From Aplysia californica (taxonomy: Eukaryota): 51,403 bases of DNA. Positions 970 through 35,883 of this stretch are shown here, one piece after another; positions within the stretch are counted from its first letter, which is position 1; each line of letters opens with the position of its first letter. The stretch is taken from positions 868,071 to 919,473 of the forward strand of contig NW_004797397.1 of NCBI RefSeq assembly GCF_000002075.1. Direction: 5' to 3'. The notes under the pieces were generated by a model that did not search any database, was not told the DNA's origin, and saw only the letters and a program-made list of their open reading frames with translations. Made by a program: the position numbers and the translations under genes.

Positions 970-1340
970 CTGAGGATGGCTGGTCAATGTTTGTCGGTCT
1001 TCTTTTGAGAAATCTGCTCTTTGATGTCTGCTGGTGACTGTTCGATGACCTCCCTTTGATTTCTGCTGGTGACTGTTCTATTACCGCCCTTTGATTTCTG
1101 CTGGTGACTGTTCTATGACATCCTTTTGATTTCTGCTGGTGACTGTTCTATGACCTCCCCTTGATTTCTGCTGGTCACTGCTTAGTGACTGCCCTTGATG
1201 TCTGGTGGTCTCTCCTGGGTGACTGCCCTTTGCTGTCTAGTGGTCAATGTTGGATAACCGCCCTTTGATGCCTACTGGTCATAGCGGGGGAGTCTGTGAT
1301 GTAGACAATGGAGGCCGTGTCTAAGCAAGGGCCGACCATC
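970..1340 (+). repeat. Distal module of 35-bp tandem repeats (diverged variant), upstream of kinase copy 1
   Basis: About 8 units resembling CCCTTTGATTTCTGCTGGTGACTGTTCTATGACCT. It has the same leader (GGCTGGTCA..TGTCGGTCTTCTTT) and trailer (TGTGATGTAGACAATGG..AAGCAAGGGCCGAC) as the other modules. Confidence 0.85.
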
Positions 1341-1724
1341 GTTGATGCTGTTTGTTTGTTTTCTTAATACATCCACGAAAAAACACATCACTGATTGTTG
1401 TAAAATGAACTACATTAAAATAAAATTATGTTATTGTCTATCAATTCACACGGTAACTGGTTCCTTAAACCATATGCTTTCCGTATTAACACACAACAGT
1501 TTCTATAACCACCATTTCAAGGAAAAATAATCAAAAACAACGAAAAAAGTACAGAAAAGACAGCGATACTTAACTTTGCGACAAATAAAGTACAAAGAGG
1601 CTGCAGATATATTGCTTGTTTAAACTTTGTCAAGTTTGTCAAAAGAGTTTTTTGTGCAATAAATCGTATGCAAGAAAACATAACAAGAGTTTCTTTAACT
1701 CTGTTGCACTTTGTACATCATCTG

Positions 1725-2112
1725 TGAGCTTGTGAGAGTGGTTGGTCAGTGTGTGTCGGCCTACTTTGGGGAAACTGCCCTTTTGATCTCTGCTTGTCAT
1801 TGTTGGGTGACAACCCTTTGATGTCTGATGGTCATTCTTGAGTAACTACCCTTTGATGTCTACGGGTCGGTTTTGGGTGACCCCCTTTGATGTTTGATGT
1901 TCCATGTTGGGTGACCGCCCTTTCATGTCTGAAGGTCATTGTAGAGTTACCGCCCTTTGAATTCTGATGGTCCTTGTTGGGTGACCGCCCTTTGATGTCT
2001 GATGGTCATTGTTGGGTGACCGCCCTTTGATGTCCGATGGTCAATGCAGCCGGCGTCTGTGATGTGAACAATGGAAGCTATGTCAAAGCAAGGACCGACA
2101 ATCGGTGTCGGT
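1725..2112 (+). promoter_or_regulatory. Promoter-proximal 35-bp tandem array (TCF/helper/Sox motif-containing), copy 1
   Basis: Unit GTTGGGTGACCGCCCTTTGATGTCTGATGGTCATT. CCTTTGA(T/A) cores at ~1815, 1850, 1884, 1954, 1989 and 2024, with a variant CCTTTCAT at 1919. It ends ~45 bp before the TATA box. The repeat is seen directly; the regulatory role is inference. Confidence 0.65.
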
Positions 2113-2158
2113 GATTTTGAAGACAAATACCCCTCTTTAGGGGGACGCTTGACTCCAC

Positions 2159-2193
2159 TATAAAAGTGAAGGGGTCTGGACATTCCTTCAGTT
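2159..2193 (+). promoter_or_regulatory. Pol II core promoter: TATA box plus initiator, copy 1
   Basis: TATAAAAG at 2159-2166 and TCAGTT at 2188-2193 put the TATA T at -31 relative to the Inr A (2190), the canonical spacing. The same arrangement occurs with TATA at 6645, 13609, 20521, 27313 and 34224. Confidence 0.8.
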
Positions 2194-2278
2194 CAGCATA
2201 TCGCTCTCGCAGTGACAGGTTGGATACGTCTTGTATTTTCCTCTACAGAATTTCTCGACAACTCGGCAGATATCTAGC

Positions 2279-3826
2279 ATGGCTACTCTCACGTTTCCCG
2301 ATGTCACCGTCATTCGTGATGGAGACTTTCTGAACAATTTCAACTTGAAGTTTGTGCGTGTCCTTGCCAAGAAGAAGAATTCGCTAGTTTTGGAAGCTTC
2401 CATGAAGAACGACGACTCCATTCGTAAGGCAATCAAGAAGATCCCTTACCTGGACAGTAAAGGACGACATCGAGGTCTCGAGGACAGCACCGAGGAGTTG
2501 ACCATCATGCACAACGTTCAGCACCCGCACCTCATGAAGATGGACTGGGTGGTCACGTGTGACAGCTTCCTGGCTATCTATATGCCCCTGTGTTCTCAGG
2601 GATCTTTGGATGGATTGCGTCAGTCGCTCCAATGGGACCAAGTGGAACGGGTTTTCGTACAAACCGCCTGTGCCCTGAGATATCTCCACGACCAGCGCTG
2701 TGTACACGGGGACGTGAAGCCAGGCAACATCTTCCTAGACGCCTCCGGCAACGCCATCCTCGGAGACTTTGGTTGTTCTCAGATCTTACCTGATGGAGAA
2801 AACACCGTGAGTCGCTGGAGAGGAACTCTGGGATACCATGGACCTGAGTTTTTCCTTGGTTACAAATTCGACCCTTTTCTGGTAAGTTTTTCTTCTTTAT
2901 TTTTTACGTTTCAGCCTTGATTTGTTGTGGTCATTACACAGGTTAGACGTGCGTTTTTAGCACACAGAAAGGTATCTGCTGTTTGTGTTTATTCTGCCAA
3001 AGAAATATTATTACTTTTATGTCTACGCTTTCACCCTTTTGTCTAATTCATCGGTATTAGGGTGTCATCACTTTTATTACACAATCTATCTATATTATTT
3101 GTAGCATGATATCGTTATCAATTGCTTCAATTTTTATGATGTTTGATATTAATGTAACGTGATTCCGATGTCTAATGTTCCGGTCATTTGTTTTCTTTTT
3201 TTTCAGATGGACGCATACGCACTGGGAGCCACGCTGTGGTCTTTGGTTTTCAGACTCAAACCAGCAGACCTGGATCTACTGGACGTTGTGAGGAATTTTT
3301 CTCTGCCCGAAATGTTCAGGTAAGACAGCTATAATACTGTCATGGTTTACTGAATTGTATTATATATTAGAACGCAGTAGAATGGTTTCCACCATAGACG
3401 TTTTCGTTGTATGCTTTGATGTGAAAGTATAAATTGTATTGAAACGTTGATGAAGTTCTGTGTGGATACGGGGCTTAAATAAACTAAAACATTTTTATAT
3501 CTTTGACAGCATTTTTTTCATATAACTGAAGACTTTTATGCTTCAATTATTATACATTACTAATACCATCTTGCATCGCTTGGTATCCAGTTATATATCA
3601 TGTTATGTGTCATCTTTGAAGCATTTTAAACGCATGTTATCATTTCTTTTTACTAATATTTAATTTGCTAAAACTTTTCTAACCTCAATCTGTGTTTGTT
3701 TTCCTCCACAGAGAAGTTCTGAAAGGACTTTTGCGCGGAGATCCTCAGAAGCGACTGTCTGTTCCCGGCCTCTTGGAGTTCTTGTCTACTCGTGAGAAGC
3801 TCAGGGGAATTATGGAGGGTTTGTGA
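2279..3826 (+). CDS. Divergent Ser/Thr protein kinase, copy 1 (276 aa; exons 2279-2881, 3207-3319, 3712-3826)
   Basis: Exon 1 has KAIKK, alphaC EE, HGDVKPGN, DFG and GTLGYHGPE. GT-AG splicing adds MDAYALGATLW (subdomain IX) and LLRGDPQKRLS (subdomain XI). Splice phases 0 and 2 are consistent; 831 nt including TGA. Confidence 0.92.
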
Positions 3827-3870
3827 GAAACACGGACCTTTGGTAGTCGCAACCTTTTTTCTTTCTATTA

Positions 3871-4723
3871 ACTAATTTGATACTAATTTTTCTTTCCTAC
3901 TAACAGTAATAGCACAACCCAACACCGAGCTCTTTTAAATCTCGCTGACTTAATTTTAATTACAGTTTTGGTACCATTAAAAGCAATAACATATTTTTTT
4001 AAAAGATTAACCCGAACACTAACGAATTAAAAAAAAACCCTTTTTAATTGACACTAGGTATAAAGTAACCAATATTAAGTAAATGTACTCCACAAACTAA
4101 AAAACACTAAATTAAATACACTTCAAAAACTGAAAGGAAAAGAACACTGAGTAATCAAAACTAACTGTAACATATTAACTGATCAAGAATAATTATACAA
4201 CACTAACTGGATAACGCTAAGAAAGACCAGCTAGCCAATGCTAAAACACTAGCTAAGCATCATTACACCTTATCTAACAAACTCAAGTTGTAAATTAAAT
4301 ATTACTAGATTTAAATTTAAGGAAAAACAGACTAAAAAGTTATTCAGAAAAGAGCTTAAGTAATGAATACTAACTTTAACTTAACAATATTAACTAATCA
4401 GCAATAACTATAAAACCATAACTGAATAACGCTAACTATGAAATACCAGCTGGCCAATTCTAAAACACTAGCTAACCATCATTACACCTCATTTAACAAA
4501 CTCAAGTTGTAAAACATTAGCTGTCTCCATCAACCACTGACAAACCTGCGCCCACTACTAACTTATCAATGCCAACAATTAAAGAACACATATTAACCGC
4601 TGATAAACCAAAATCAACCTCTAACTACCCACCATTAACCATTTTAACAACCATTTTAATTACTAACTTACCAACACTAACCACTAACTAACCAACCCTA
4701 ACAACTAATTAACTAACACTAAC
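3871..4723 (+). repeat. A/C-rich low-complexity block with many ACTAAY motifs (presumptive 3' UTR), copy 1
   Basis: 16 ACTAAC/ACTAAT by hand count, plus an internal diverged duplication (~4171-4295 vs ~4386-4515). First downstream AATAAA at 4887, more at 5055 and 5071. Equivalent blocks at 8357-9208, 15317-16169, 22233-23083 and 29020-29873. Confidence 0.8.
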
Positions 4724-5869
4724 TCCCCCAGACGTGAGCGCTCGGTAGCGCCGTCTTTTTAATCAGGCCTCAGTGTACTGTGTACTCTGTGACGGTCCCA
4801 AGCCCGTGAAAACTGAGAGGGAAAAGACGAGTTCTGTGATGAAGAGAACTGTAGCAATGTGGACAAATTAAAAATGCGCCTATGAAAATAAACATTGTTC
4901 CCCCTTTGCCCTCTGCGAAATATAACCCTAAATACTGAGCATACAAGTGCTTCAACTCTTTTTTGACATACTACTCTCCTTTTTCAATTTCCAGTTTTAC
5001 AAATTTGCCCTCATTTTCTTGATCTTTTCAGCTCATTGTTACTTTTATAACAACAATAAATAATTTTAAAAATAAAGAAGACATGCCTTCTAAACAAAAG
5101 TAAAGAGACTACGATAAACAACATTGAGCTGTTTCAGCTTGGGCTGGAGGGTTTACAACAGGTCTTTCGATTTCTTTGTTTGATTCAAAATGTAGCAACC
5201 TTATTCGTGTGTCATATCGCTGAGCATTACCAGAATGTTCTTAGAGTAAATCTAGTATTCTCTGCCGACACAGCCAGTATGTATGTGTGTCTGTATGTGT
5301 GTTTGTTTGTTTGTTTGCTGTATATCCAGAATCCAGACCATTTTGGACACAACTGAAATCGCGCCGGGGAAAAACAGAGTCATTTTCAGTAACTCCACAG
5401 ATAAAATGTCTTGTAAAAGGCGTTACTCACTACAAGATCAGAAGCCCTCACCTCTGCGAACTCTTCCCTTTGCCCTCCTCCCCTCCCCTCCCATTTCATC
5501 AAACCCCTACATTCCCCAAAGGGCACCTTTCCACCCATTCCCCTCCACCCACACTTCTTCTATATGCTTCTACATTCCATTCTCTTCGAATACGTTTTGT
5601 TTACTGAGACTTTTAAAAAAACCTTTAAAAAACCCACCAAAAGAACCAACAACCAAGAGCAACAAAAACGAACACACAAACATAAACAAACGTGATCAGT
5701 CTCCCCATACCCCGTGACCTGAGAAAGAGAAGAAAACAAGGAAGAAATTCCCCAGTAGTCCGTCAGGAAAACCGAACAATGACCAATCCCAACACTCTCA
5801 GTTCAGTCGCCTGTCTCCCCTCGACACCTCTCATTTCCCCACCCCGCACCCCTCCACCCTCTCCCCCCT

Positions 5870-5969
5870 NNNNNNNNNNNNNNNNNNNNNNNNNNNNNNN
5901 NNNNNNNNNNNNNNNNNNNNNNNNNNNNNNNNNNNNNNNNNNNNNNNNNNNNNNNNNNNNNNNNNNNNN
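5870..5969. other. Assembly gap (100 N)
   Basis: Run of N. Confidence 1.
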
Positions 5970-6174
5970 AGGAAAAATAATCAAAAACAACGAAAAAAGT
6001 ACAGAAAAGACAGCGATACTTAACTTTGCGACAAATAAAGTACAAAGAGGCTGCAGATATATTGCTTGTTTAAACTTTGTCAAGTTTGTCAAAAGAGTTT
6101 TTTGTGCAATAAATCGTATGCAAGAAAACATAACAAGAGTTTCTTTAACTCTGTTGCACTTTGTACATCATCTG

Positions 6175-6598
6175 TGAGCTTGTGAGAGTGGTTGGTCAGT
6201 GTGTGTCGGCCTACTTTGGGGAAACTGCCCTTTTGATCTCTGCTTGTCATTGTTGGGTGACAACCCTTTGATGTCTGATGGTCATTCTTGAGTAACTACC
6301 CTTTGATGTCTACGGGTCGGTTTTGGGTGACCCTCTTTGATGTTTGATGTTCCATGTTGGGTGACCGCCCTTTCATGTCTGAAGGTCATTGTAGAGTTAC
6401 CGCCCTTTGAATTCTGATGGTCCTTGTTGGGTGACCGCCCTTTGGGGGGGGAGGGGGCATTGTTGGGTGACCGCCCTTTGATGTCTGATGGTCATTGTTG
6501 GGTGACCGCCCTTTGATGTCCGATGGTCAATGCAGCCGGCGTCTGTGATGTGAACAATGGAAGCTATGTCAAAGCAAGGACCGACAATCGGTGTCGGT
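6175..6598 (+). promoter_or_regulatory. Promoter-proximal 35-bp tandem array, copy 2
   Basis: As in copy 1, with one extra unit partly replaced by a G-run. TATA at 6645. Confidence 0.6.
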
Positions 6599-6764
6599 GA
6601 TTTTGAAGACAAATACCCCTCTTTAGGGGGACGCTTGACTCCACTATAAAAGTGAAGGGGTCTGGACATTCCTTCAGTTCAGCATATCGCTCTCGCAGTG
6701 ACAGGTTGGATACGTCTTGTATTTTCCTCTACAGAATTTCTCGACAACTCGGCAGATATCTAGC

Positions 6765-8312
6765 ATGGCTACTCTCACGTTTCCCGATGTCACCGTCATT
6801 CGTGATGGAGACTTTCTGAACAATTTCAACTTGAAGTTTGTGCGTGTCCTTGCCAAGAAGAAGAATTCGCTAGTTTTGGAAGCTTCCATGAAGAACGACG
6901 ACTCCATTCGTAAGGCAATCAAGAAGATCCCTTACCTGGACAGTAAAGGACGACATCGAGGTCTCGAGGACAGCACCGAGGAGTTGACCATCATGCACAA
7001 CGTTCAGCACCCGCACCTCATGAAGATGGACTGGGTGGTCACGTGTGACAGCTTCCTGGCTATCTATATGCCCCTGTGTTCTCAGGGATCTTTGGATGGA
7101 TTGCGTCAGTCGCTCCAATGGGACCAAGTGGAACGGGTTTTCGTACAAACCGCCTGTGCCCTGAGATATCTCCACGACCAGCGCTGTGTACACGGGGACG
7201 TGAAGCCAGACAACATCTTCCTAGACGCCTCCGGCAACGCCATCCTCGGAGACTTTGGTTGTTCTCAGATCTTACCTGATGGAGAAAACACCGTGAGTCG
7301 CTGGAGAGGAACTCTGGGATACCATGGACCTGAGTTTTTCCTTGGTTACAAATTCGACCCTTTTCTGGTAAGTTTTTCTTCTTTATTTTTTACGTTTCAG
7401 CCTTGATTTGTTGTGGTCATTACACAGGTTAGACGTGCGTTTTTAGCACACAGAAAGGTATCTGCTGTTTGTGTTTATTCTGCCAAAGAAATATTATTAC
7501 TTTTATGTCTACGCTTTCACCCTTTTGTCTAATTCATCGGTATTAGGGTGTCATCACTTTTATTACACAATCTATCTATATTATTTGTAGCATGATATCG
7601 TTATCAATTGCTTCAATTTTTATGATGTTTGATATTAATGTAACGTGATTCCGATGTCTAATGTTCCGGTCATTTGTTTTCTTTTTTTTCAGATGGACGC
7701 ATACGCACTGGGAGCCACGCTGTGGTCTCTGGTTTTCAGACTCAAACCAGCAGACCTGGATCTACTGGACGTTGTGAGGAATTTTTCTCTGCCCGAAATG
7801 TTCAGGTAAGACAGCTATAATACTGTCATGGTTTACTGAATTGTATTATATATTAGAACGCAGTAGAATGGTTTCCACCATAGACGTTTTCGTTGTATGC
7901 TTTGATGTGAAAGTATAAATTGTATTGAAACGTTGATGAAGTTCTGTGTGGATACGGGGCTTAAATAAACTAAAACATTTTTATATCTTTGACAGCATTT
8001 TTTTCATATAACTGAAGACTTTTATGTTTCAATTATTATACATTACTAATACCATCTTGCATCGCTTGGTATCCAGTTATATATCATGTTATGTGTCATC
8101 TTTGAAGCATTTTAAACGCATGTTATCATTTCTTTTTACTAATATTTAATTTGTTAAAACTTTTCTAACCTCAATCTGTATTTGTTTTCCTCCACAGAGA
8201 AGTTCTGAAAGGACTTTTGCGCGGAGATCCTCAGAAGCGACTGTCTGTTCCCGGCCTCTTGGAGTTCTTGTCTACTCGTGAGAAGCTCAGGGGAATTATG
8301 GAGGGTTTGTGA
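6765..8312 (+). CDS. Divergent Ser/Thr protein kinase, copy 2 (exons 6765-7367, 7693-7805, 8198-8312)
   Basis: Same exon structure as copy 1. Catalytic loop HGDVKPDN; frame intact. Confidence 0.92.
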
Positions 8313-11249
8313 GAAACACGGACCTTTGGTAGTCGCAACCTTTTTTCTTTCTATTAACTAATTTGATACTAATTTTTCTTTCCTACTAACAGTAATAGCA
8401 CAACCCAACACCGAGCTCTTTTAAATCTCGCTGACTTAATTTTAATTACAGTTTTGGTACCATTAAAAGCAATAACATATTTTTTTTAAAGATTAACCCG
8501 AACACTAACAAATTAAAAAAAAACCTTTTTAATTGACACTAGGTATAAAGTAACCAATATTAAGTAAATGTACTCCACAAACTAAAAAACACTAAATTAA
8601 ATACACTTCAAAAACTGATTAGGAAAAGAACACTGAGTAATCAAAACTAACTGTAACATATTAACTGATCAAGAATAATTATACAACACTAACTGGATTA
8701 CGCTAAGAAAGACCAGCTAGCCAATGCCAAAACACTAGCTAAGCATCATTACACCTTATCTAACAAAGTCAAGTTGTAAATTAAATATTACTAGATTTAA
8801 ATTTAAGGAAAAACAGACTAAAAAGTTATTCAGAAAAGAGCTTAAGTAATGAATACTAACTTTAACTTAACAATATTAACTAATCAGCAATAACTATAAA
8901 ACCATAACTGAATAACGCTAACTATGAAATACCAGCTGGCCAATTCTAAAACACTAGCTAACCATCATTACACCTCATTTAACAAACTCAAGTTGTAAAA
9001 CATTAGCTGTCTCCATCAACCACTGACAAACTGCGCCCACTACTAACTTATCAATGCCAACAATTAAAGAACACATATTAACCGCTGATAAACCAAAATC
9101 AACCTCTAACTACCCACCATTAACCATTTTAACAACCATTTTAATTACTAACTTACCAACACTAACCACTAACTAACCAACCCTAACAACTAATTAACTA
9201 ACACTAACTCCCCCAGACGTGAGCGCTCGGTAGCGCCGTCTTTTTAATCAGGCCTCAGTGTACTGTGTACTCTGTGACGGTCCCAAGCCCGTGAAAACTG
9301 AGAGGGAAAAGACGAGTTCTGTGATGAAGAGAACTGTAGCAATGTGGACAAATTAAAAATGCGCCTATGAAAATAAACATTGTTCCCCCTTTGCCCTCTG
9401 CGAAATATAACCCTAAATACTGAGCATACAAGTGCTTCAACTCTTTTTTGACATACTACTACTAAAAAACACTAAATTAAATACACTTCAAAAACTGAAA
9501 GGAAAAGAACACTGAGTAATCAAAACTAACTGTAACATATTAACTTTTTCAATTTCCAGTTTTACAAATTTGCCCTCATTTTCTTGATCTTTTCAGCTCA
9601 TTGTTACTTTTATAACAACAATAAATAATTTTAAAAATAAAGAAGACATGCCTTCTAAACAAAAGTAAAGAGACTACGATAAACAACATTGAGCTGTTTC
9701 AGCTTGGGCTGGAGGGTTTACAACAGGTCTTTCGATTTCTTTGTTTGATTCAAAATGTAGCAACCTTATTCGTGTGTCATATCGCTGAGCATTACCAGAA
9801 TGTTCTTAGAGTAAATCTAGTATTCTCTGCCGACACAGCCAGTATGTATGTGTGTCTGTATGTGTGTTTGTTTGTTTGTTTGCTGTATATCCAGAATCCA
9901 GACCATTTTGGACACAACTGAAATCGCGCCGGGGAAAAACAGAGTCATTTTCAGTAACTCCACAGATAAAATGTCTTGTAAAAGGCGTTACTCACTACAA
10001 GATCAGAAGCCCTCACCTCTGCGAACTCTTCCCTTTGCCCTCCTCCCCTCCCATCCCATTTCATCAAACCCCTACATTCCCCAAAGGGCACCTTTCCACC
10101 CATTCCCCTCCACCCACACTTCTTCTATATGCTTCTACATTCCATTCTCTTCGAATACGTTTTGTTTACTGAGACTTTTAAAAAAACCTTTAAAAAACCC
10201 ACCAAAAGAACCAACAACCAAGAGCAACAAAAACGAACACACAAACATAAACAAACGTGATCAGTGTCCCCATACCCCGTGACCTGAGAAAGAGAAGAAA
10301 ACAAGGAAGAAATTCCCCAGTAGTCCGTCAGGAAAACCGAACAATGACCAATCCCAACACTCTCAGTTCAGTCGCCTGTCTCCCCTCGACACCTCTCATT
10401 TCCCCACCCCGCACCCCTCCACCCTCTCCCCCCCTTCCAATCCGTTCTCTGTTCTTCATTACTCCAACCCCTCCCATCCCTCACCTGTTTTTAATATTTG
10501 AATTATTTTTTTTAAAACAAAACAAACCCAACGTGGTCAGTCTCCCCATTGATCTGAGAGTGAGAAGAAAACAAGGATTATCAAAGAAAGATGAACACAG
10601 TTAACATTTCTTTGTCGAAGGCCAGAGAACCCAAACAATGGCCAATCATAACACTCTCAGTTCAGTCGCTCGTCTTGGGATCTTACAATGGGTGAATAAA
10701 AGGCGTGGCTTAAGATATGAGGGCCGTCCTATTCCACGTTTGTAGCCACTCGTGATTTAACTTACTGTGTCAAAAAAATGTCATTAAAGGCACATGGGTT
10801 ATTTCTGCCAACGAAGTACAGGATGTAGTTACTTTTACAATGTGTCCCCGTGGTTTTATGCACTTCGCATAATTTAGCCAAATTTGATCATTTTTTTGCG
10901 TAATTTCTAATTTTTTTCCCTTTTTTGCTCTTTGTATAAATTAACAGAATCGCATAATTTCACATTTTTGGGTTCAGTTTGCATAATTACACATTTTTTC
11001 TTTCATAAAAAGACGGGGCAGTACAAAGTATATGAAATGTGTTTTGAAAAGTGAAGCATTAATAAATATATTTTTACTTTAATTTTTTTAATTCCTATTA
11101 TGAGGTATTGGGAGTGGGGGGGGGGGGGGGGCTATGTGGTGGTTAGGTTTCTCTAACTAACCACGTTGTCACAAGGCTTTATTTACAACAAAAAAATAGT
11201 ACAATTCTGTTCCCGATCTTCCTTCAGCATCTATTCCCGCGAAGAAGCA

Positions 11250-27266: not shown

Positions 27267-27432
27267 GATTTTGAAGACAAATACCCCTCTTTAGGGGGAC
27301 GCTTGACTCCACTATAAAAGTGAAGGGGTCTGGACATTCCTTCAGTTCAGCATATCGCTCTCGCAGTGACAGGTTGGATACGTCTTGTATTTTCCTCTAC
27401 AGAATTTCTCGACAACTCGGCAGATATCTAGC

Positions 27433-28975
27433 ATGGCTACTCTCACGTTTCCCGATGTCACCGTCATTCGTGATGGAGACTTTCTGAACAATTTCAACTT
27501 GAAGTTTGTGCGTGTCCTTGCCAAGAAGAAGAATTCGCTAGTTTTGGAAGCTTCCATGAAGAACGACGACTCCATTCGTAAGGCAATCAAGAAGATCCCT
27601 TACCTGGACAGTAAAGGACGACATCGAGGTCTCGAGGACAGCACCGAGGAGTTGACCATCATGCACAACGTTCAGCACCCGCACCTCATGAAGATGGACT
27701 GGGTGGTCACGTGTGACAGCTTCCTGGCTATCTATATGCCCCTGTGTTCTCAGGGATCTTTGGATGGATTGCGTCAGTCGCTCCAATGGGACCAAGTGGA
27801 ACGGGTTTTCGTACAAACCGCCTGTGCCCTGAGATATCTCCACGACCAGCGCTGTGTACACGGGGACGTGAAGCCAGGCAACATCTTCCTAGACGCCTCC
27901 GGCAACGCCATCCTCGGAGACTTTGGTTGTTCTCAGATCTTACCTGATGGAGAAAACACCGTGAGTCGCTGGAGAGGAACTCTGGGATACCATGGACCTG
28001 AGTTTTTCCTTGGTTACAAATTCGACCCTTTTCTGGTAAGTTTTTCTTCTTTATTTTTTACGTTTCAGCCTTGATTTGTTGTGGTCATTACACAGGTTAG
28101 ACGTGCGTTTTTAGCACACAGAAAGGTATCTGCTGTTTGTGTTTATTCTGCCAAAGAAATATTATTACTTTTATGTCTACGCTTTCACCCTTTTGTCTAA
28201 TTCATCGGTATTAGGGTGTCATCACTTTTATTACACAATCTATCTATATTATTTGTAGCATGATATCGTTATCAATTGCTTCAATTTTTATGATGTTTGA
28301 TATTAATGTAACGTGATTCCGATGTCTAATGTTCCGGTCATTTGTTTTCTTTTTTTTCAGATGGACGCATACGCACTGGGAGCCACGCTGTGGTCTCTCG
28401 CTGTGGTCTCTGGTTTCAGGTAAGACAGCTATAGTTGTGAGGAATTTTTCTCTGCCCGAAATGTTCAGGTAAGACAGCTATAATACTGTCATGGTTTACT
28501 GAATTGTATTATATATTAGAACGCAGTAGAATGGTTTCCACCATAGACGTTTTCGTTGTATGCTTTGATGTGAAAGTATAAATTGTATTGAAACGTTGAT
28601 GAAGTTCTGTGTGGATACGGGGCTTAAATAAACTAAAACATTTTTATATCTTTGACAGCATTTTTGTCATATAACTGAAGACTTTTATGTTTCAATTATT
28701 ATACATTACTAATACCATCTTGCATCGCTTGGTATCCAGTTATATATCATGTTATGTGTCATCTTTGAAGCATTTTAAACGCATGTTATCATTTCTTTTT
28801 ACTAATATTTAATTTGCTAAAACTTTTCTAACCTCAATCTGTGTTTGTTTTCCTCCACAGAGAAGTTCTGAAAGGACTTTTGCGCGGAGATCCTCAGAAG
28901 CGACTGTCTGTTCCCGGCCTCTTGGAGTTCTTGTCTACTCGTGAGAAGCTCAGGGGAATTATGGAGGGTTTGTGA
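27433..28975 (+). CDS. Kinase copy 5 with rearranged exon 2 (exons 27433-28035, 28361-28419, 28861-28975); shortened isoform or pseudogene
   Basis: Exon 2 carries a 13-bp duplication and a copied donor TTCAG|GTAAGAC at 28419/28420. Using it keeps phase 2 and gives a protein 18 aa shorter. Using the original donor (28468) includes an in-frame TAA. Confidence 0.7.
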
Positions 28976-31831
28976 GAAACACGGACCTTTGGTAGTCGCA
29001 ACCTTTTTTCTTTCTATTAACTAATTTGATACTAATTTTTCTTTCCTACTAACAGTAATAGCACAACCCAACACCGAGCTCTTTTAAATCTCGCTGACTT
29101 AATTTTAATTACAGTTTTGGTACCATTAAAAGCAATAACATATTTTTAAAAAAGATTAACCCGAACACTAACGAATTTTAAAAAAACCCTTTTTAATTGA
29201 CACTAGGTATAAAGTAACCAATATTAAGTAAATGTACTCCACAAACTAAAAAACACTAAATTAAATACACTTCAAAAACTGATTAGGAAAAGAACACTGA
29301 GTAATCAAAACTAACTGTAACATATTAACTGATCAAGAATAATTATACAACACTAACTGGATAACGCTAAGAAAGAGCAGCTAGCCAATGCTAAAACACT
29401 AGCTAAGCATCATTACACCTTATCTAACAAACTCAAGTTGTAAATTAAATATTACTAGATTTAAATTTAAGGAAAAACAGACTAAAAAGTTATTCAGAAA
29501 AGAGCTTAAGTAATGAATACTAACTTTAACTTAACAATATTAACTAATCAGCAATAACTATAAAACCATAACTGAATAACGCTAACTATGAAATACCAGC
29601 TGGCCAATTCTAAAACACTAGCTAACCATCATTACACCTCATTTAACAAACTCAAGTTGTAAAACATTAGCTGTCTCCATCAACCACTGACAAACCTGCG
29701 CCCACTACTAACTTATCAATGCCAACAATTAAAGAACACATATTAACCGCTGATAAACCAAAATCAACCTCTAACTACCCACCACTAACCATTTTAACAA
29801 CCATTTTAATTACTAACTTACCAACACTAACCACTAACTAACCAACCCTAACAACTAATTAACTAACACTAACTCCCCCAGACGTGAGCGCTCGGTAGCG
29901 CCGTCTTTTTAATCAGGCCTCAGTGTACTGTGTACTCTGTGACGGTCCCAAGCCCGTGAAAACTGAGAGGGAAAAGACGAGTTCTGTGATGAAGAGAACT
30001 GTAGCAATGTGGACAAATTAAAAATGCGCCTATGAAAATAAACATTGTTCCCCCTTTGCCCTCTGCGAAATATAACCCTAAATACTGAGCATACAAGTGC
30101 TTCAACTCTTTTTTGACATACTACTCTCCTTTTTCAATTTCCAGTTTTACAAATTTGCCCTCATTTTCTTGATCTTTTCAGCTCATTGTTACTTTTATAA
30201 CAACAATAAATAATTTTAAAAATAAAGAAGACATGCCTTCTAAACAAAAGTAAAGAGACTACGATAAACAACATTGAGCTGTTTCAGCTTGGGCTGGAGG
30301 GTTTACAACAGGTCTTTCGATTTCTTTGTTTGATTCAAAATGTAGCAACCTTATTCGTGTGTCATATCGCTGAGCATTACCAGAATGTTCTTAGAGTAAA
30401 TCTAGTATTCTCTGCCGACACAGCCAGTATGTATGTGTGTCTGTATGTGTGTTTGTTTGTTTGTTTGCTGTATATCCAGAATCCAGACCATTTTGGACAC
30501 AACTGAAATCGCGCCGGGGAAAAACAGAGTCATTTTCAGTAACTCCACAGATAAAATGTCTTGTAAAAGGCGTTACTCACTACAAGATCAGAAGCCCTCA
30601 CCTCTGCGAACTCTTCCCTTTGCCCTCCTCCCCTCCCCTCCCATTTCATCAAACCCCTACATTCCCCAAAGGGCACCTTTCCACCCATTCCCCTCCACCC
30701 ACACTTCTTTTATATGCTTCTACATTCCATTCTCTTCGAATACGTTTTGTTTACTGAGACTTTTTAAAAAACCTTTAAAAAACCCACCAAAAGAACCAAC
30801 AACCAAGAGCAACAAAAACGAACACACAAACATAAACAAACGTGATCAGTCTCCCCATACCCCGTGACCTGAGAAAGAGAAGAAAACAAGGAAGAAATTC
30901 CCCAGTAGTCCGTCAGGAAAACCGAACAATGACCAATCCCAACACTCTCAGTTCAGTCGCCTGTCTCCCCTCGACACCTCTCATTTCCCCACCCCGCACC
31001 CCTCCACCCTCTCCCCCCTTCCAATCCGTTCTCTGTTCTTCATTACTCCAACCCCTCCCATCCCTCACCTGTTTTTAATATTTGAATTATTTTTTTTAAA
31101 ACAAAACAAACCCAACGTGGTCAGTCTCCCCATTGATCTGAGAGTGAGAAGAAAACAAGGATTATCAAAGAAAGATGAACACAGTTAACATTTCTTTGTC
31201 GAAGGCCAGAGAACCCAAACAATGGCCAATCATAACACTCTCAGTTCAGTCGCTCGTCTTGGGATCTTACAATGGGTGAATAAAAGGCGTGGCTTAAGAT
31301 ATGAGGGCCGTCCTATTCCACGTTTGTAGCCACTCGTGATTTAACTTACTGTGTCAAAAAATGTCATTAAAGGCACATGGGTTATTTCTGCCAACGAAGT
31401 ACAGGATGTAGTTACTTTTACAATCTGTCCCCGTGGTTTTATGCACTTCGCATAATTTAGCCAAATTTGATCATTTTTTTGCGTAATTTCTAATTTTTTC
31501 CCCTTTTTTGCTCTTTGTATAAATTAACAGAATCGCATAATTTCACATTTTTGGGTTCAGTTTGCATAATTACACATTTTTTCTTTCATAAAAAGACGGG
31601 GCAGTACAATGTATATGAAATGTGTTTTGAAAAGTGAAGCATTAATAAATATATTTTTACTTTAATTTTTTAAATTCCTATTATGAAGTATTGGGAGTTT
31701 GGTGGGGGGGGGGCTATGTGGTGGTTAGGTTTCTCTAACTAACCACGTTGTCACAAGGCTTTATTTACAACAAAAAAATAGTACAATTCTGTTCCCGATC
31801 TTCCTTCAGCATCTATTCCCGCGAAGAAGCA

Positions 31832-34177
31832 AGTGAGAAAGGCTGGTCACTGTGTGTCGGTCTTCTTTTGGAGAACAAGCCTTTGATGTCTACTGGTCAC
31901 TATTGGGTGACCGCCCTTTGATGACTTCTGGCCATTGCAGCGTCGTCTTTGATGTAGACAATGGAAGCCACGTAAAAGCAATGTGGGGGGGGGGGGGGTG
32001 AATCTTTGTTGATGTTATTGAAGACAAAAAAAAAACACTCTTAGATAATACGGTGGAAACAAGTAATAAAACCACGACATAATATTGTCAGCCCAATAAT
32101 ATCATCTAAACATTATTGTTTTCTAAAAGCACCGATTAAAAGAACACACAAAATGAAAGCAGGTACAAGCCTTTGGGACAAAGAAAGTACAGTGGGCCCC
32201 GCTCACATGTTGCTCCATTAAGCTTTTTCAAATTTGTCAAAATAATTTATTTGTGGTATAAATATTGTTAGAAGGAAAATAAAATTGACATGAGCTTTCT
32301 TTAACTGTGAGCTTGTGAGAGTGGCTGGTCAGTGTGTGTCCGCATTCTTTTGGGAAACCGCCCTTTGATCTCTGCTCGTCATTGTTAGGTGACCGCCCTT
32401 TGATGTCTACTGGTCATTTGCCAATGTTGAGTGACCGTCCTTTGATGTCTAGTGGTCACTGTGGTGATGTCTCTGGTGTAGGCAATTAAAGCCGTGTCAA
32501 AACGTGCCAACGGTCACAAACATTAATTTTCTGTTTTATTTACATAATAAAATTTAACACGTTATCTTTTGATAGTATTTATTACGTTATCCAATATTTA
32601 GCCTTCATTCAAGTTTACTAACGTCATTTTACAAACATCAGTATGTCTGTTTCTATTAAGGGTACATTTATTTAAATCATTGTCATGAGGCCTCGTTTAC
32701 TACTAAATACTATACTACTTTGGTTCACGTACTTGCTTCAGCATCCATTCCGGCGAAGAAGCAGGTGAGAAAGGCTGGTCACTGTGTGTCGGTCTTCTTT
32801 GGGGAAGCCGCTCTTTGACATGTGCTAGTCGAGGCTGGGTGACCGCCCTTTGGTGTCTGGTAGTTGTTATTGTGTGACTCCACTTTGATGTCTACTGGTC
32901 ACAGTTGGGTGACCACCGTTTACTGACAGGTGGTCACAGACGGATAACCGCCCTTAGTTTCTGATGGTCATTGTTGAGTGACTGCCTTTTAATATCTGCT
33001 GATCTCTACCGGGTGACTGTCCTTTGATGACTGGTGGTCTCTACTAGGTGACTGCCTTTGTTGTCTGGGGGGGGGGGGGTCAATGTTGGATAACCTCCCT
33101 TTGATGCCTACTGGTCATAGCGGCGGAGTCTGTGATGTAGACAATTGATGCCGTGTCAAAGCAAGAGCCGACAATCATTATTGATGTTTATGACAACATC
33201 CCCCTTCTCCCACCCCCAAATAAATATTTTGTTTTAAAATGAAAGAAAACAGAAAAAATGACAAAAACAAACCAAAAACAAACAAAACAAAAACAGCAAA
33301 ACAACCCCCCCCCCCCCCCCACTGAATATACACTAGTAAAAAATTAAATATGGAGGTTCATACTATTCTCAACTAATTCACCCGTCAAAGAGCTGTCTAA
33401 CTTATTAAAATTTACTTATCGTGTTTACATATAACTATTTTTATGAGTAAAGTAAAGTAAAGTTGTTCCCGAATCCGATCTGGACATTGGAGATTGCCAT
33501 GTTAGTGAGACAACTTACAAGAATTTCGGCCTTTTCTATGAGAACCGATTGAAAACAAAGAAAAACAAAACAAATAGAAAACAAATCAAAGAAGGAAAGA
33601 CTTGACTGAGAGCATTTTACTTTGAGGGAAAAAAGGTTGCTTGTTCATACTTTTTCAAATTTGTCAAAATAATTCTTCTTTTTTTTCGACATATCGTTTG
33701 CAGGAAAACGTGACAAGAGTTATCTTTAACTCTGTTGCACTTTGTACATCATCTGTGAGCTTGTGAGAGTGGCTGGTCAGTGTGTGTCGGCCTTCTTTGG
33801 GGAAGCCGCCCTTTGATGTCAGACGGTCATTGTTGGATCACCGCCCTTTGATGTCTGATGGTCATTCTTGAGTAACTACCCTTTGATGTCTACGGGTCGG
33901 TTTTGGGTGACCCTCTTTGATGTTTGATGTTCCATGTTGGGTGACCGCCCTTTCATGTCTGAAGGTCATTGTAGAGTTACCGCCCTTTGAATTCTGATGG
34001 TCCTTGTTGGGTGACCGCCCTTTGATGTCTGATGGTCATTGTTGGGTGACCGCCCTTTGATGTCTGATGGTCATTGTTGGGTGACCGCCCTTTGATGTCC
34101 GATGGTCAATGCAGCCGGCGTCTGTGATGTGAACAATGGAAGCTATGTCAAAGCAAGGACCGACAATCGGTGTCGGT
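31832..34177 (+). promoter_or_regulatory. Four modules of 35-bp repeats upstream of copy 6
   Basis: Homologous to 11250-13562. TATA at 34224. Confidence 0.65.
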
Positions 34178-34343
34178 GATTTTGAAGACAAATACCCCTC
34201 TTTAGGGGGACGCTTGACTCCACTATAAAAGTGAAGGGGTCTGGACATTCCTTCAGTTCAGCATATCGCTCTCGCAGTGACAGGTTGGATACGTCTTGTA
34301 TTTTCCTCTACAGAATTTCTCGACAACTCGGCAGATATCTAGC

Positions 34344-35383
34344 ATGGCTACTCTCACGTTTCCCGATGTCACCGTCATTCGTGATGGAGACTTTCTGAAC
34401 AATTTCAACTTGAAGTTTGTGCGTGTCCTTGCCAAGAAGAAGAATTCGCTAGTTTTGGAAGCTTCCATGAAGAACGACGACTCCATTCGTAAGGCAATCA
34501 AGAAGATCCCTTACCTGGACAGTAAAGGACGACATCGAGGTCTCGAGGACAGCACCGAGGAGTTGACCATCATGCACAACGTTCAGCACCCGCACCTCAT
34601 GAAGATGGACTGGGTGGTCACGTGTGACAGCTTCCTGGCTATCTATATGCCTCTGTGTTCTCAGGGATCTTTGGATGGATTGCGTCAGTCGCTCCAATGG
34701 GACCAAGTGGAACGGGTTTTCGTGCAAACCGCCTGTGCCCTGAGATATCTCCACGACCAGCGCTGTGTACACGAGGACGTGAAGCCAGACAACATCTTCC
34801 TAGACGCCTCCGGCAACGCCATCCTCGAAGACTTTGGTTGTTCTCAGATCTTACCTGATGGAGAAAACACCGTGAGTCGCTGGAGAGGAACTCTGGGATA
34901 CCATGGACCTGAGTTTTTCCTTGGTTACAAATTCGACCCTTTTCTGGTAAGTTTTTCTTCTTTTTTTTTACGTTTCAGCCTTGATTTGTTGTGATCATTA
35001 CGCAGGTTAGACGTAAGTTTTTAGCACACAGAAAGTTATCTGCTGTTTGTGTTTATTCTGCCAAAGAAATAGTATTACTTTTATGTCTACGCTTTCACCC
35101 TTTTGTCTAATTCATCGGTATTAGGGTGTCATCACTTTTATTACACAATCTATCTATATTATTTGTAGCATGATATCGTTATCAATTGCTTCAATTTTTA
35201 TGATGTTTGATATTAATGTAACGTGATTCCGATGTCTAATGTTCCGGTCATTTGTTTTCTTTTTTTTCAGATGGACGCATACGCACTGGGAGCCACGCTG
35301 TGGTCTCTGGTTTTCAGACTCAAACCAGCAGACCTGGATCTACTGGACGTTGTGAGGAATTCTTCTCTGCCCGAAATGTTCAG
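34344..35383 (+). pseudogene. Kinase copy 6, 3'-truncated (exons 34344-34946, 35271-35383; exon 3 absent)
   Basis: HGD>HED (34773-34775) and LGDFG>LEDFG (34827-34829). Homology stops ~40 bp into intron 2 and no subdomain XI exon is found downstream. Confidence 0.8.
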
Positions 35384-35883
35384 GTAAGACAGCTGTAATA
35401 TATATATACATATATCGTGTTTGCCGCTCGAGGTCCACTGTATCGCCACAATGCAATGCTTAACTACCGCTCGAACTTCCTCTAAGTGAATAGTGTAGTT
35501 ACTCTCTTTTTATGCTTGCTTATTTTTTTTTAATTACGTTGTCATAAATTATATTTTCCTTGATTATTTTTTCACCTTACAAAAGTGCAATTTTACATTG
35601 GTCCTCCCCTTCTTACACTTAACTTTTACAGGAGCCAACCCCTCCCCCCCCCCCCCCCCTTTTTTTCCCTGGCGTCAGATATTATTTGAACGTCCCCGGG
35701 GTTTTCTGGATGAATCGATCCTTGTCTAGATTAGCCTCCTGGCCTAAGATTTAAAGTCTTTCACAAATTTTTTTATACTAGATCTAGATCTATCTACCTG
35801 GTGCTACGGAACCATGAAGCAAGCTAAGTAATCAGACAACCGTGTTTACGATTGATTTACTCTAGATCTAGATTCTAGATCTA

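What the first reader, a model, noticed from the sequence alone, without database searches (positions are those of the whole stretch)
970..35422. Candidate system: an amplified atypical-kinase cassette with multimerised enhancer-like repeats upstream and multimerised RNA-binding motifs downstream
Seen: every full ~6.9-kb unit has four modules of TCF/Sox-motif repeats, then TATA/Inr, a compact kinase gene, and an ACTAAY-dense 3' region ending in a hairpin. Inference: a lineage-specific, dosage-amplified gene that may be switched on transcriptionally by Wnt/beta-catenin-TCF (plus Sox) and controlled post-transcriptionally by a STAR protein, for example in germline or early embryo. I do not recognise this as a described locus, but I cannot search.
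Basis: partly seen in the sequence, partly recalled or inferred. Interest (0 to 1): 0.8.

Follow-up and report, generated by a model that had tools for sequence, protein, structure and literature searches.

The report
Tandem kinase genes ending in twister ribozymes
A sea-hare (Aplysia californica) scaffold carries six near-identical tandem copies of a small snail-specific protein-kinase gene, and each complete copy is followed by a strongly conserved self-cleaving 'twister' ribozyme, which may be a natural case of a ribozyme cutting the end of a messenger RNA.

Summary
The window holds head-to-tail ~6.9-kb units, 98.8-100% identical. Each has four modules of a 35-bp CCTTTGATG repeat, a TATA/Inr promoter, a 3-exon 276-aa kinase gene, and a G-poor 3' region with 16 sense ACTAAY ending in a hairpin.

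The hairpin's U5 tail runs straight into a full-length type-P1 twister ribozyme (62.7 bits, E 7e-12), present in five units.

- Hairpin plus twister are 92-95% identical in paralogue arrays and marine-metagenome contigs whose kinases are only ~50% identical. The sequence on both sides is unalignable.
- All 41 genomic copies of this twister class lie in arrays of this kinase clade.
- All 176 stem and pseudoknot cells pair, and 5 of the 16 pairs show compensatory changes.

The 35-bp repeat is not a dispersed element. It is a multimerised copy of a single promoter element that is conserved in another species. ACTAAY clustering is also conserved in one ~50%-identity paralogue subfamily.

Most likely this is a self-contained Pol II cassette whose transcript is cut by the ribozyme. 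No RNA evidence exists. Wnt/TCF and STAR control remain untested motif readings.

The parts
1..35422 (+). Head-to-tail array of ~6.9-kb kinase cassettes: six gene copies in the window. The array continues upstream of the window with a degenerate copy.
5870..5969 (.). Assembly gap inside the spacer of unit 1. About 2.5 kb of a unit is unrepresented, and no coding sequence is involved.
18150..20430 (+). Four paralogous repeat modules (A1 ~18150-18290, B1 ~18620-18790, A2 ~19040-19440, B2 ~20050-20430). Each is a leader, then n x 35-bp units carrying CCTTTGATG and TGGTCA, then a trailer. The same layout precedes every copy.
13609..13728 (+). Core promoter and 5' UTR of copy 3: TATAAAAG at 13609-13616, Inr TCAGTT with A+1 at 13640, and an 89-nt 5' UTR. 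The identical block starts at 2158, 6644, 13608, 20520, 27312 and 34223.
13729..15272 (+). Kinase gene copy 3 (exons 13729-14331, 14657-14769, 15158-15272; 276 aa). The other copies are 2279-3826, 6765-8312 and 20641-22188 (intact), 27433-28975 (exon 2 rearranged), and 34344-35383 (truncated, no exon 3).
15273..16176 (+). G-poor (9% G) 3' region with 16 sense ACTAAY. Seven of them lie in the last ~95 nt before the hairpin. There is no AATAAA.
16177..16206 (+). Conserved hairpin followed by U5. The other copies are at 4731-4760, 9216-9245, 23091-23120 and 29881-29910. The predicted ribozyme cleavage lies between U16206 and A16207.
   Evidence: the cleavage-site rule comes from PMC5408937
4756..4825 (+). 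Twister-P1 ribozyme of unit 1
9241..9310 (+). Twister-P1 ribozyme of unit 2
16202..16271 (+). Twister-P1 ribozyme of unit 3
23116..23185 (+). Twister-P1 ribozyme of unit 4
29906..29975 (+). Twister-P1 ribozyme of unit 5
17705..17915 (.). SINE-like dispersed repeat inserted in the spacer. It is present in the C127 units and absent from the C436/C2028 paralogue spacers.

Best explanation
The locus is a recently amplified or homogenised tandem array of a self-contained Pol II gene cassette in Aplysia californica.

**Each cassette contains, in order:**
1. Spacer modules built by multiplying an ancestral promoter-proximal element (CCCTTTGAT...TGGTCA) into 35-bp repeats.
2. A TATA/Inr core promoter and a conserved 5' UTR.
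3. A 3-exon gene for a 276-aa Ser/Thr-type protein kinase. It belongs to a family seen so far only in gastropod genomes and marine-metagenome contigs. It has a complete kinase fold and invariant catalytic residues but no glycine-rich loop.
4. A ~0.9-kb 3' region rich in ACUAAY.
5. A conserved hairpin plus U5.
6. A type-P1 twister self-cleaving ribozyme.

**Shown:** the anatomy, the ribozyme fold with compensatory changes, its exclusive linkage to this kinase clade, and its far stronger conservation than the coding sequence, both across paralogues and in other species.

**Inferred:** the nascent transcript cleaves itself between U16206 and A16207. The kinase mRNA is then released with a non-polyadenylated end (ACUAAC cluster, hairpin, U5 with a 2',3'-cyclic phosphate). 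The downstream RNA carries a 5'-OH, which also separates neighbouring units transcriptionally.

The ACUAAC cluster and the hairpin would then be the protein-binding 3'-terminal module that replaces a poly(A) tail. A STAR/KH protein is a candidate binder. The multimerised upstream units would act as an enhancer for an HMG-box or other factor whose identity is open.
For: **Array and gene model:**

**Twister**
- Rfam RF03160 matches the full model 1-68 at 62.7 bits, E 6.6e-12, five times in the window.
- On 11 variants, all 176 cells pair in P1/P2/P4/T1/T2. Five pairs have compensatory changes, one of them in pseudoknot T1. Slid controls give 30-62% pairing and 0-1 compensatory pairs.

**Linkage**
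- An exact-pattern census finds 81 copies genome-wide against 0 in the control.
- All 41 copies of the long class lie on kinase-array contigs and strands.
- The ribozyme sits 803-930 nt after the stop codon in C127, C344, C934, C804 and C170.

**Other species**
- Intronless homologues on marine-metagenome contigs carry the same twister 497 nt (L023) or 73 nt (L067, L070) after the stop codon.
- Those proteins are at most 53% identical to anything in this genome.

**Conservation profile**
- Hairpin plus twister: 92-95% identity, z 33-38.
- 3' UTR body and post-twister flank: z about 1.
- Exon 1: 67-70% identity.

**Poly(A) signals:** there is no AATAAA between stop codon and twister in six lineages. 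C344, C170 and L023 also have none of AATAAA or ATTAAA within 600 nt after the ribozyme.

**Promoter:** 262 nt are 69.5% identical to L023 (z 24) and include one copy of the repeat unit at conserved spacing.

**Kinase**
- Pfam Pkinase E 6.6e-26.
- K53, E73, H143, D145, K147, N150, D163 and G165 are invariant, and no member has GxGxxG.
- The AlphaFold model of paralogue P0001 has pLDDT 91.7.
- dN/dS is 0.25-0.66 in all paralogue pairs but one.
Against: - There is no RNA evidence at all. The one true poly(A)+ RNA run has 0 reads on the gene, and the three 'RNA?' runs look like DNA.
- The ribozyme scores 4.5 bits below Rfam's gathering cut-off, and its P1 has only four A-U/G-U pairs.
- L067 and L070 have an AATAAA about 45 nt upstream of the cleavage site.
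- One relative (P0027) comes from a source labelled 'merc', which I recall is a catalogue of poly(A)-selected metatranscriptomes. Polyadenylation upstream of the ribozyme therefore remains possible.
- The hairpin is conserved in sequence but shows no covariation, and it is absent upstream of the L068 twister.
- The Candidula homologue and two other contigs have no twister within reach.
- In the ~31%-identity kinase clade the link to the short twister class is only partial.
Confidence: 0.55

Rival explanations
1. The twister acts as terminator or insulator, not as the maker of the mRNA end. The mRNA is cleaved and polyadenylated at a weak or non-canonical site upstream. The ribozyme then cuts the downstream nascent RNA, which promotes Pol II termination and prevents read-through into the next unit of the array.
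For: - L067 and L070 have an AATAAA 45 nt before the cleavage site.
- The window 3' region has five ATTAAA.
- A relative (P0027) comes from a source labelled 'merc', which I recall holds poly(A)-selected metatranscriptomes.
- Tandem head-to-tail units need efficient termination (inference).
Against: - The conserved block extends upstream of the cut (hairpin, ACUAAC cluster) and stops exactly at the ribozyme's 3' end.
- C344, C170 and L023 have no AATAAA or ATTAAA anywhere between the stop codon and 600 nt past the twister.
- No poly(A)+ reads were found.
Confidence: 0.25
2. One reading: a poly(A) mRNA is switched on by Wnt/beta-catenin-TCF (plus Sox) through the repeats and repressed by a STAR protein through ACUAAY. 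The hairpin is only a structural end.
For: - CCTTTGATG fits the TCF core and occurs 57 times on one strand.
- One copy, plus an inverted TCAAAG, is conserved in the promoters of homologues from other species.
- ACTAAY clusters are conserved in the one ~50%-identity paralogue subfamily tested.
Against: - All repeat copies descend from one unit, so the count is one event and not 57.
- Conservation inside the unit is as high at TGGTC as at CTTTGAT, and it is low at the Sox-like core.
- The ~50% paralogue arrays lack the motif.
- L067 and L070 lack ACTAAC.
- The model ignores the ribozyme.
- No binding or expression data exist.
Confidence: 0.15
3. The array is transcriptionally silent or decaying satellite-like DNA, and the ribozyme is a passenger.
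For: - No reads in the poly(A)+ run.
- No Logan- or RNA-derived proteins in the 90% clusters.
- Copy 5 is rearranged, copy 6 is truncated with hits in the HGD and DFG regions, and an upstream copy is broken.
- dN/dS is 1.86 between the window copy (L001) and the C436 paralogue L007, although that rests on only 15 changes.
Against: - Twelve of twelve exon-1 copies of the close subfamily are open, as are all C344-type copies.
- dN/dS is mostly 0.25-0.6.
- Catalytic residues are invariant across ~35-50% divergent members.
- Promoter, 5' UTR and ribozyme are conserved across species.
Confidence: 0.1
4. The twister marks the 5' end of a (decayed) non-LTR retrotransposon inserted behind the ancestral gene, as for Perere-3 in Schistosoma mansoni.
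For: - Twister variants sit at the 5' end of Perere-3 (PMC8501958).
- Some short-class twisters in this genome lie near a LINE reverse-transcriptase fragment.
Against: - Sequence downstream of the ribozyme is unalignable between lineages, while sequence upstream is conserved.
- The spacer ORFs have no Pfam hit.
- All 41 copies of this class are tied to kinase genes.
- The reverse-transcriptase fragment near other twisters is on the opposite strand.
Confidence: 0.05

Closest known systems
Type-P1 twister self-cleaving ribozyme (Rfam RF03160)
   Same: - Full-length match to the model.
- Conserved J1-2 UAA, GCC, the CGGUCCCAAGCCCG loop region and GAGGG.
- P1/P2/P4 and both pseudoknots pair in all variants, with compensatory changes.
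   Different: - It scores 62.7 bits, below the 67.2-bit gathering cut-off.
- It has a long P3 with two U-U mismatches.
- It is fixed behind a protein-coding gene family, with a conserved hairpin directly upstream.
- Cleavage has not been tested.
[quoted passage not shown]
   Same: A twister in a repeated metazoan genetic unit. Cleavage defines an RNA end.
   Different: - There the ribozyme heads the element and the conserved body lies downstream.
- Here the conserved partner (gene, ACUAAC cluster, hairpin) lies upstream and nothing downstream is conserved.
- No RT/EN is present.
Discontinuous hammerhead ribozyme in the 3' UTR of mammalian Clec2 genes (as reviewed in PMC6765202)
   Same: A self-cleaving ribozyme between the stop codon and the end of a cellular mRNA of a duplicated gene family.
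   Different: - It is a different ribozyme class.
- It lies upstream of a poly(A) signal and is thought to reduce expression.
- Here several lineages have no recognisable poly(A) signal, and the ribozyme is contiguous.
Replication-dependent histone gene arrays (own knowledge)
   Same: Tandemly repeated compact Pol II genes. The mRNAs end in a conserved stem-loop made by cleavage, not by polyadenylation.
   Different: - Histone ends are cut by the U7 snRNP/CPSF73 machinery.
- The stem-loop consensus differs, and no Rfam histone stem-loop hit appeared.
- Here the cut would be autocatalytic.
rDNA intergenic spacers with repeated enhancers and duplicated promoter pieces (Xenopus, Drosophila; own knowledge)
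   Same: The spacers of a tandem array carry multiplied short repeats and partial duplicates of the promoter-upstream region.
   Different: Here the gene is a Pol II protein-coding gene. The repeats have no shown enhancer activity.
AMPK-related / CAMK-like kinases (SIK3, NUAK1, MARK3, TSSK6)
   Same: They give the best sequence and fold matches. For SIK3 (8oku_B): Foldseek E 1e-18, TM 0.79.
   Different: - Identity is only ~24%.
- No regulatory domains are present.
- The glycine-rich loop is replaced by a Lys-rich stretch.
- RefSeq names for the paralogues are mutually inconsistent (ppk34-like, ppk16-like, NUAK2, CDC5, At5g20050).
- There is no orthology.

Membership tests
Twister-P1 ribozyme (RF03160) | Score at or above Rfam's curated gathering cut-off (67.2 bits) | tested here: not met
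   The score is 62.7 bits (58-65 bits in relatives), with E 6.6e-12 and the full model 1-68 matched. This is a curation threshold, not a structural feature.
Twister-P1 ribozyme (RF03160) | Stems P1, P2 and P4 in type-P1 order, maintained by covariation | tested here: met
   All cells pair. Three compensatory pairs occur in P2 and one in P4. Slid controls give 30-62% pairing.
Twister-P1 ribozyme (RF03160) | Double pseudoknot (T1, T2) joining the internal loops to loop L4 | tested here: met
   T1 columns 42-44 with 64-66, and T2 columns 12-13 with 47-48, pair in 11 of 11 variants. In T1, C:G changes to U:A in 5 variants. I assigned the pairing partners from the published architecture and from complementarity.
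Twister-P1 ribozyme (RF03160) | Conserved U-A cleavage dinucleotide next to P1, and conserved core nucleotides | tested here: met
   UUUUU^AAU at 16202-16209. GCC, CGGUCCCAAGCCCG and GAGGG are present. One conserved U of UAAA is A here, and it is G or U in relatives. The cleavage rule comes from PMC5408937.
Twister-P1 ribozyme (RF03160) | Self-cleavage activity | not testable with these tools
   This needs in vitro transcription or sequencing that is specific for RNA end chemistry.
Eukaryotic protein kinase (Pfam PF00069) | Pfam score above cut-off and a bilobal kinase fold | tested here: met
   Exon 1 alone scores 91.7 bits against a cut-off of 31.7. The model of the 93%-identical paralogue P0001 has pLDDT 91.7 and pTM 0.90, with kinase matches at TM 0.75-0.79.
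Eukaryotic protein kinase (Pfam PF00069) | Catalytic residues: beta3 Lys, alphaC Glu, HxD...N, DFG | tested here: met
   K53, E73, H143, D145, K147, N150, D163 and G165 are invariant in 12 family members.
Eukaryotic protein kinase (Pfam PF00069) | Glycine-rich GxGxxG nucleotide-binding loop | tested here: not met
   The region reads LAKKKNSLV in the window protein. No family member has the motif.
AMPK-related kinases (NUAK/SIK), as some RefSeq names suggest | Orthology-level similarity and family-specific regulatory regions | tested here: not met
   The best PDB sequence E-values are ~1e-14, spread over NEK, SNF1, STK32, SIK, TSSK and CaMK. Identity is 24%. The protein is a bare kinase domain.
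TCF/LEF-responsive enhancer | HMG-site core SCTTTGATS, multimerised near a promoter | tested here: met
   CCTTTGATG occurs 57 times on + against 0.72 expected. One copy is conserved in L023.
TCF/LEF-responsive enhancer | TCF binding and response to beta-catenin | not testable with these tools
   No data. The motif is absent from the ~50% paralogue arrays.
STAR/QKI-type response element | ACUAAY core with a nearby UAAY half-site on the sense strand of the mRNA | tested here: met
   Sixteen ACTAAY and 47 TAAY (21 expected) occur in 929 nt. There are 6-11 ACTAAY in the unalignable 3' UTRs of C344, C934 and C804.
STAR/QKI-type response element | Binding by a STAR protein and a regulatory effect | not testable with these tools
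   No data. L067 and L070 lack the motif.
Ribozyme-headed non-LTR retrotransposon | A conserved element body with RT/EN downstream of the ribozyme | tested here: not met
   The downstream flank is unalignable (z -1.7 to 1.1). The spacer ORFs have no Pfam hit.

The most novel reading that the evidence does not exclude
A twister ribozyme is the hard-wired 3'-end-forming element of a whole Pol II protein-coding gene family: at least 41 genes in Aplysia, plus homologues in other, presumably planktonic, gastropods. The mRNAs it produces would be non-polyadenylated and end in an ACUAAC cluster, a conserved hairpin and U5 with a 2',3'-cyclic phosphate. This would be the first cellular mRNA-biogenesis role for twister. 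It would also be a natural, portable 'promoter-to-ribozyme' cassette that could explain why this gene family amplifies so easily.
Probability: 0.4. Interest if true: 0.9.

Novelty: new variant of a known kind. Interest (0 to 1): 0.78.

Why it matters
Twister ribozymes are widespread in eukaryotes. According to the papers read here (PMC6765202, PMC8501958), they have no confirmed cellular function beyond 5' processing of a schistosome retrotransposon.

Here a twister is locked to the 3' end of a protein-coding gene family. It is far better conserved than the protein, across paralogues and in other species.

- This gives a concrete, testable natural system for ribozyme-made mRNA ends or ribozyme-driven termination.
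- It shows a promoter element caught in the act of being multimerised into a minisatellite 'enhancer'.
- It suggests that such genes may be invisible in poly(A)-selected transcriptomes. No protein model for the six window copies appears in the collection searched.

Full-text searches found no paper linking twister ribozymes with Aplysia or molluscs.

Tried and rejected
**Expression**
- The 'RNA?' runs X1, X3 and X5 cover introns and spacer evenly, so they are DNA-like and give no splice evidence.
- The poly(A)+ raw-read run X17 has no reads on 13500-17200. It covers only the dispersed repeat at 17685-17994.
- Depth in X1 cannot be turned into a copy number.

**35-bp repeat**
- The dispersed-repeat explanation is rejected. 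Hits occur only on C127, C436, C2028, C688 and C3806.
- Repeats as a family-wide feature are also rejected. C344, C934, C804, C1032 and C170 have neither CTTTGAT clusters nor minisatellites.

**Wider searches**
- A JGI metagenome scan for the long-class twister pattern gave 0 hits.
- The Candidula locus (8-kb flanks) and the contigs L065 and L066 have no twister.
- Literature searches on the Aplysia kinome, 'ppk34-like', twister plus Aplysia or molluscs, and twister plus 3'-end formation found nothing relevant.
- The earlier-findings search for 'twister' found nothing.

**False or limited results**
- The miRNA and snoRNA hits in L022 are (GT)n/(AT)n artefacts.

- The spliced 276-aa product of the window was never joined or searched. 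Exons were searched one by one.
- The RefSeq paralogue P0001 (93% identical) stood in for the fold.
- The large representative protein search was not used.

Full report
**What the window is.** The window is G000:C127:868071-919473 of a 927,310,431-bp assembly in 4,332 contigs. Its closest database proteins are RefSeq models of Aplysia californica, taxid 6500. No protein model for the six gene copies of the window is in the collection. The 90% cluster holds only XP_035829622.1 (contig C2028) and XP_012941570.2 (C436). A broken copy 8.9 kb upstream of the window is annotated as XP_005096430.1.

**The gap, tested first.** N 5870-5969 lies in the spacer of unit 1.
- The left flank aligns to unit position 3586 (counted from the ATG of unit 3), and the right flank resumes near position ~6114.
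- The ATG-to-ATG spacing across the gap is 4486, against 6792-6964 elsewhere. About 2.5 kb of a unit is therefore not represented.
- No exon or ORF crosses the gap. Continuity cannot be judged, and I did not fill it.

**Check of the observation.**
- *Array.* Six kinase ATGs lie at 2279, 6765, 13729, 20641, 27433 and 34344. The units are 98.8-99.4% identical to unit 3, and homology ends at 35422.
- *Gene.* The model is 13729-14331, 14657-14769 and 15158-15272, with GT/AG borders and 276 aa.
- *State of the copies.* Copies 1-4 are intact. Copy 5 has a scrambled exon 2. Copy 6 stops 39 nt into intron 2 and carries G144E and G162E.
- *Modules.* Each spacer has four CTTTGAT-rich modules. They are two A/B pairs, each made of a leader, n x 35-bp units and a trailer, so they are partial duplicates of the region just upstream of the promoter. 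CCTTTGATG occurs 57 times, all on +, against 0.72 expected.
- *Core promoter.* TATAAAAG (13609) and TCAGTT (A at 13640) are 31 nt apart.
- *ACTAAY.* It is 106:10 in favour of the + strand. The total of 116 compares with 65 +/- 9 in shuffles. Sixteen lie in the 929 nt after the stop codon.
- *Hairpin.* It sits at 16177-16201 and folds at -11.7 kcal/mol, z -2.2.

So the description is confirmed. Only the 'Sox' part is weak, because that stretch is the least conserved in the repeat.

An Rfam scan places a full-length type-P1 twister ribozyme at 16202-16271 (62.7 bits, gathering score 67.2, E 6.6e-12). Identical copies lie at 4756, 9241, 23116 and 29906. It begins with the U5 that follows the hairpin. 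By the rule that twister cuts at the U-A step next to P1 (PMC5408937), cleavage is predicted between U16206 and A16207.

**Is it a real twister?** I aligned 11 different variants from this genome and one metagenome contig. With the twister architecture written out (P1, P2, P4 and pseudoknots T1 and T2), all 176 cells pair. Five pairs carry compensatory double changes: three in P2, one in P4 and one in T1. Sliding the partners gives 30-62% pairing and 0-1 compensatory pairs. I assigned the pseudoknot partners from the published architecture and from complementarity.

**Linkage to the kinase genes.**
- Every unit examined in the clade that is at least 47% identical in protein has the hairpin plus twister on the gene strand, 803-930 nt after the stop codon. 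This holds for C127, C344, C934, C804 and C170.
- An exact-pattern census finds 81 twisters in the genome and 0 for the reversed control. All 41 of the 'long' class lie in arrays of this clade: C127 x5, C344 x16, C934 x5, C436 x3, C2028 x3, C170 x3, C804 x2, plus C688, C464, C326 and C343.
- Each of the 14 C344 kinase copies listed has the element about 1.76 kb from the end of its exon 1.
- A second, 'short' class has 40 copies. It lies 1.1-6.7 kb downstream of kinases that are only ~31% identical, on C627, C2384, C546, C923, C33, C244, C351, C209, C427, C815 and C1896. About half of its copies have no recognised kinase nearby, and many kinases of that clade have no matching twister.

**Other species.** Protein searches found intronless homologues on marine-metagenome contigs.
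- L023 (P0006) has the twister 497 nt after the stop codon.
- L067 (P0023) and L070 (P0022) have it 73 nt after the stop codon.
- L068 has a twister 2.07 kb upstream of a kinase on the same strand, as expected for a preceding unit.
- P0006 is at most 53% identical to anything in this genome, so these contigs come from other organisms. They are presumably planktonic gastropods; that is an inference.
- A land-snail homologue (Candidula, 39% identical) and two further contigs show no twister.

**Conservation profile.**

| Segment | Window vs L023 | Window vs C344 |
|---|---|---|
| Hairpin plus twister | 92% (z 33) | 95% (z 38) |
| Exon 1 DNA | 67% | 70% |
| Promoter plus 5' UTR | 69.5% (z 24) | last 120 nt only: 67% (z 9) |
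| 3' UTR body and 200 nt after the twister | not above shuffles (z 1.1) | not above shuffles (z 0.9 and -1.7) |

The conserved block ends exactly at the 3' end of the ribozyme and extends upstream through the hairpin. The hairpin is conserved in sequence without covariation, and it is missing before the L068 twister.

**Origin of the repeats.**
- The 35-bp repeat DNA occurs only on contigs of the close subfamily.
- The ~50% paralogue arrays have neither the motif nor any minisatellite.
- The L023 promoter holds one copy of the unit: CTTTGAT at 215-221 and TGGTCA at 231-236, 137 nt before its TATA box. The last window unit is 134 nt before its TATA box. The trailer, with an inverted TCAAAG, is also conserved, and it is present in L067 too.

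The repeats are therefore a multimerised ancestral promoter element. This favours a cis-regulatory role but does not name the factor. Within the unit, TGGTC is at least as conserved as CTTTGAT.

**The 3' region.**
- ACTAAC or TACTAA is among the most frequent hexamers in the 3' UTRs of C344, C934 and C804. Those UTRs have ordinary base composition and contain 6-11 sites where about 1 is expected.
- A cluster lies within ~110 nt of the hairpin in every Aplysia lineage, and L023 has two copies there.
- L067 and L070 lack the motif and have AATAAA instead.
- No AATAAA lies between stop codon and twister in the six other lineages. C344, C170 and L023 have neither AATAAA nor ATTAAA up to 600 nt beyond the ribozyme.

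**The protein.**
- Exon 1 matches Pkinase at E 6.6e-26. PDB sequence hits are weak and scattered across families.
- Twelve family members share invariant K53, E73, H143, D145, K147, N150, D163 and G165, and none has a glycine-rich loop.
- The 93%-identical RefSeq paralogue P0001 models as a complete kinase (pLDDT 91.7). It is nearest to SIK3 and NUAK1-MARK3 at TM ~0.78 and 24% identity.
- dN/dS among close paralogues is 0.25-0.66. One pair has 13 non-synonymous and 2 synonymous changes.
- The genome holds well over 150 exon-1-like copies, many of them in tandem arrays.

The exons were searched separately.

**Expression.** No listed run is on record as RNA. X1, X3 and X5 cover introns and spacer, so they look like DNA. 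The poly(A)+ raw-read run X17 gives no read on the gene. The only hint of transcription in the family is P0027, whose source is labelled 'merc', which I recall is a metatranscriptome catalogue. The absence of poly(A)+ reads fits a non-polyadenylated mRNA, but it fits silence in that sample equally well.

**Mechanism and rivals.**
- *Best reading (0.55).* This is a self-contained promoter-to-ribozyme cassette. Self-cleavage at 16206/16207 releases an mRNA ending in the ACUAAC cluster, the hairpin and U5 with a cyclic phosphate. The same cut separates neighbouring units.
- *Main rival (0.25).* Polyadenylation occurs upstream, and the ribozyme serves only as terminator or insulator.
- *A silent array (0.1)* or *a retroelement relic (0.05)* fits the conservation pattern poorly.

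**Comparison with what is known, and novelty.**
- Twister is a known ribozyme class. Its only proposed eukaryotic role in the papers read here is 5' processing of Perere-3 in Schistosoma (PMC8501958).
- A hammerhead sits in the 3' UTRs of Clec2 genes (PMC6765202).
- Histone arrays make stem-loop-ended mRNAs by protein and snRNP cleavage (own knowledge).
- A twister fixed at the 3' end of a cellular protein-coding gene family, conserved across paralogues and species, was not found in any full-text search.

I rate it a new variant of a known kind, with high interest. The functional claim rests on sequence evidence only.

Noticed in passing
window 45555-45917 (-) and 50532-50867 (-): Exons of an ISCU/NifU-like iron-sulfur scaffold gene (NifU_N, E 2.6e-13) lie on the opposite strand just beyond the array. 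The 50.5-kb ORF looks like its N-terminal exon but has no Pfam hit.
   Followed up: partly
window 17705-17915, once per unit: A ~190-nt dispersed SINE-like repeat (about 1,956 first-look candidates in the genome) sits in the spacer. It is covered by poly(A)+ reads, mostly from the - side. It is absent from the C436/C2028 paralogue spacers, so the C127 array was amplified or homogenised after this insertion.
   Followed up: partly
G000 contigs C102 (5 copies), C1589 (5), C815 (4 by the exact pattern), C60, C711, C122, C535, C876: Short-class twister ribozymes recur on one strand at 5-27 kb spacing with no recognised kinase nearby. Some lie next to a LINE reverse-transcriptase fragment on the opposite strand (L059, L061, L062). 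What they belong to is unexplained.
   Followed up: partly
L023 473-1321, L067 211-1032, L070 136-969, versus window 13729-15272: The homologues on marine-metagenome contigs are intronless, while the Aplysia genes have two introns. Promoter and ribozyme are shared, so this is intron gain or loss and not retroposition.
   Followed up: no
window 28361-28473 (copy 5) and 34344-35422 (copy 6): Copy 5 has a small rearrangement or duplication inside exon 2. This could be real decay or a mis-assembly. The edge copy 6 is truncated in intron 2 and has G144E (HGD) and G162E (next to DFG).
   Followed up: yes
G000:C127:859201-859807 (L019 9131-9737), upstream of the window: A seventh, frameshifted copy with its own repeat modules lies upstream. 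It is the only copy on this scaffold with a RefSeq protein in the collection (XP_005096430.1, named 'receptor-like protein kinase At5g20050').
   Followed up: partly
window 13640-13728; L013, L014, L015, L023 (alignment A3): A 5' UTR block just after the Inr (around ATCGC..GCTCT.GCAGTGA) and a TTTCT..ACA.CT block before the ATG are conserved in all three ~50%-identity lineages. Their function is unknown.
   Followed up: no
L001 versus L007 (exon 1): The window copy and the C436 copy differ by 13 non-synonymous but only 2 synonymous changes (dN/dS 1.86 on few sites). This hints at fast protein evolution on the window lineage.
   Followed up: no
window 46892-47235 and 49413-49586: A 175-bp x 2 tandem repeat and a 21/46-bp minisatellite lie outside the array, inside the ISCU gene region.
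   Followed up: no
L022 3012-3101: Strong-looking Rfam miRNA and snoRNA hits (mir-3149 and others) fall on a (GT)n/(AT)n simple repeat and are artefacts.
   Followed up: yes
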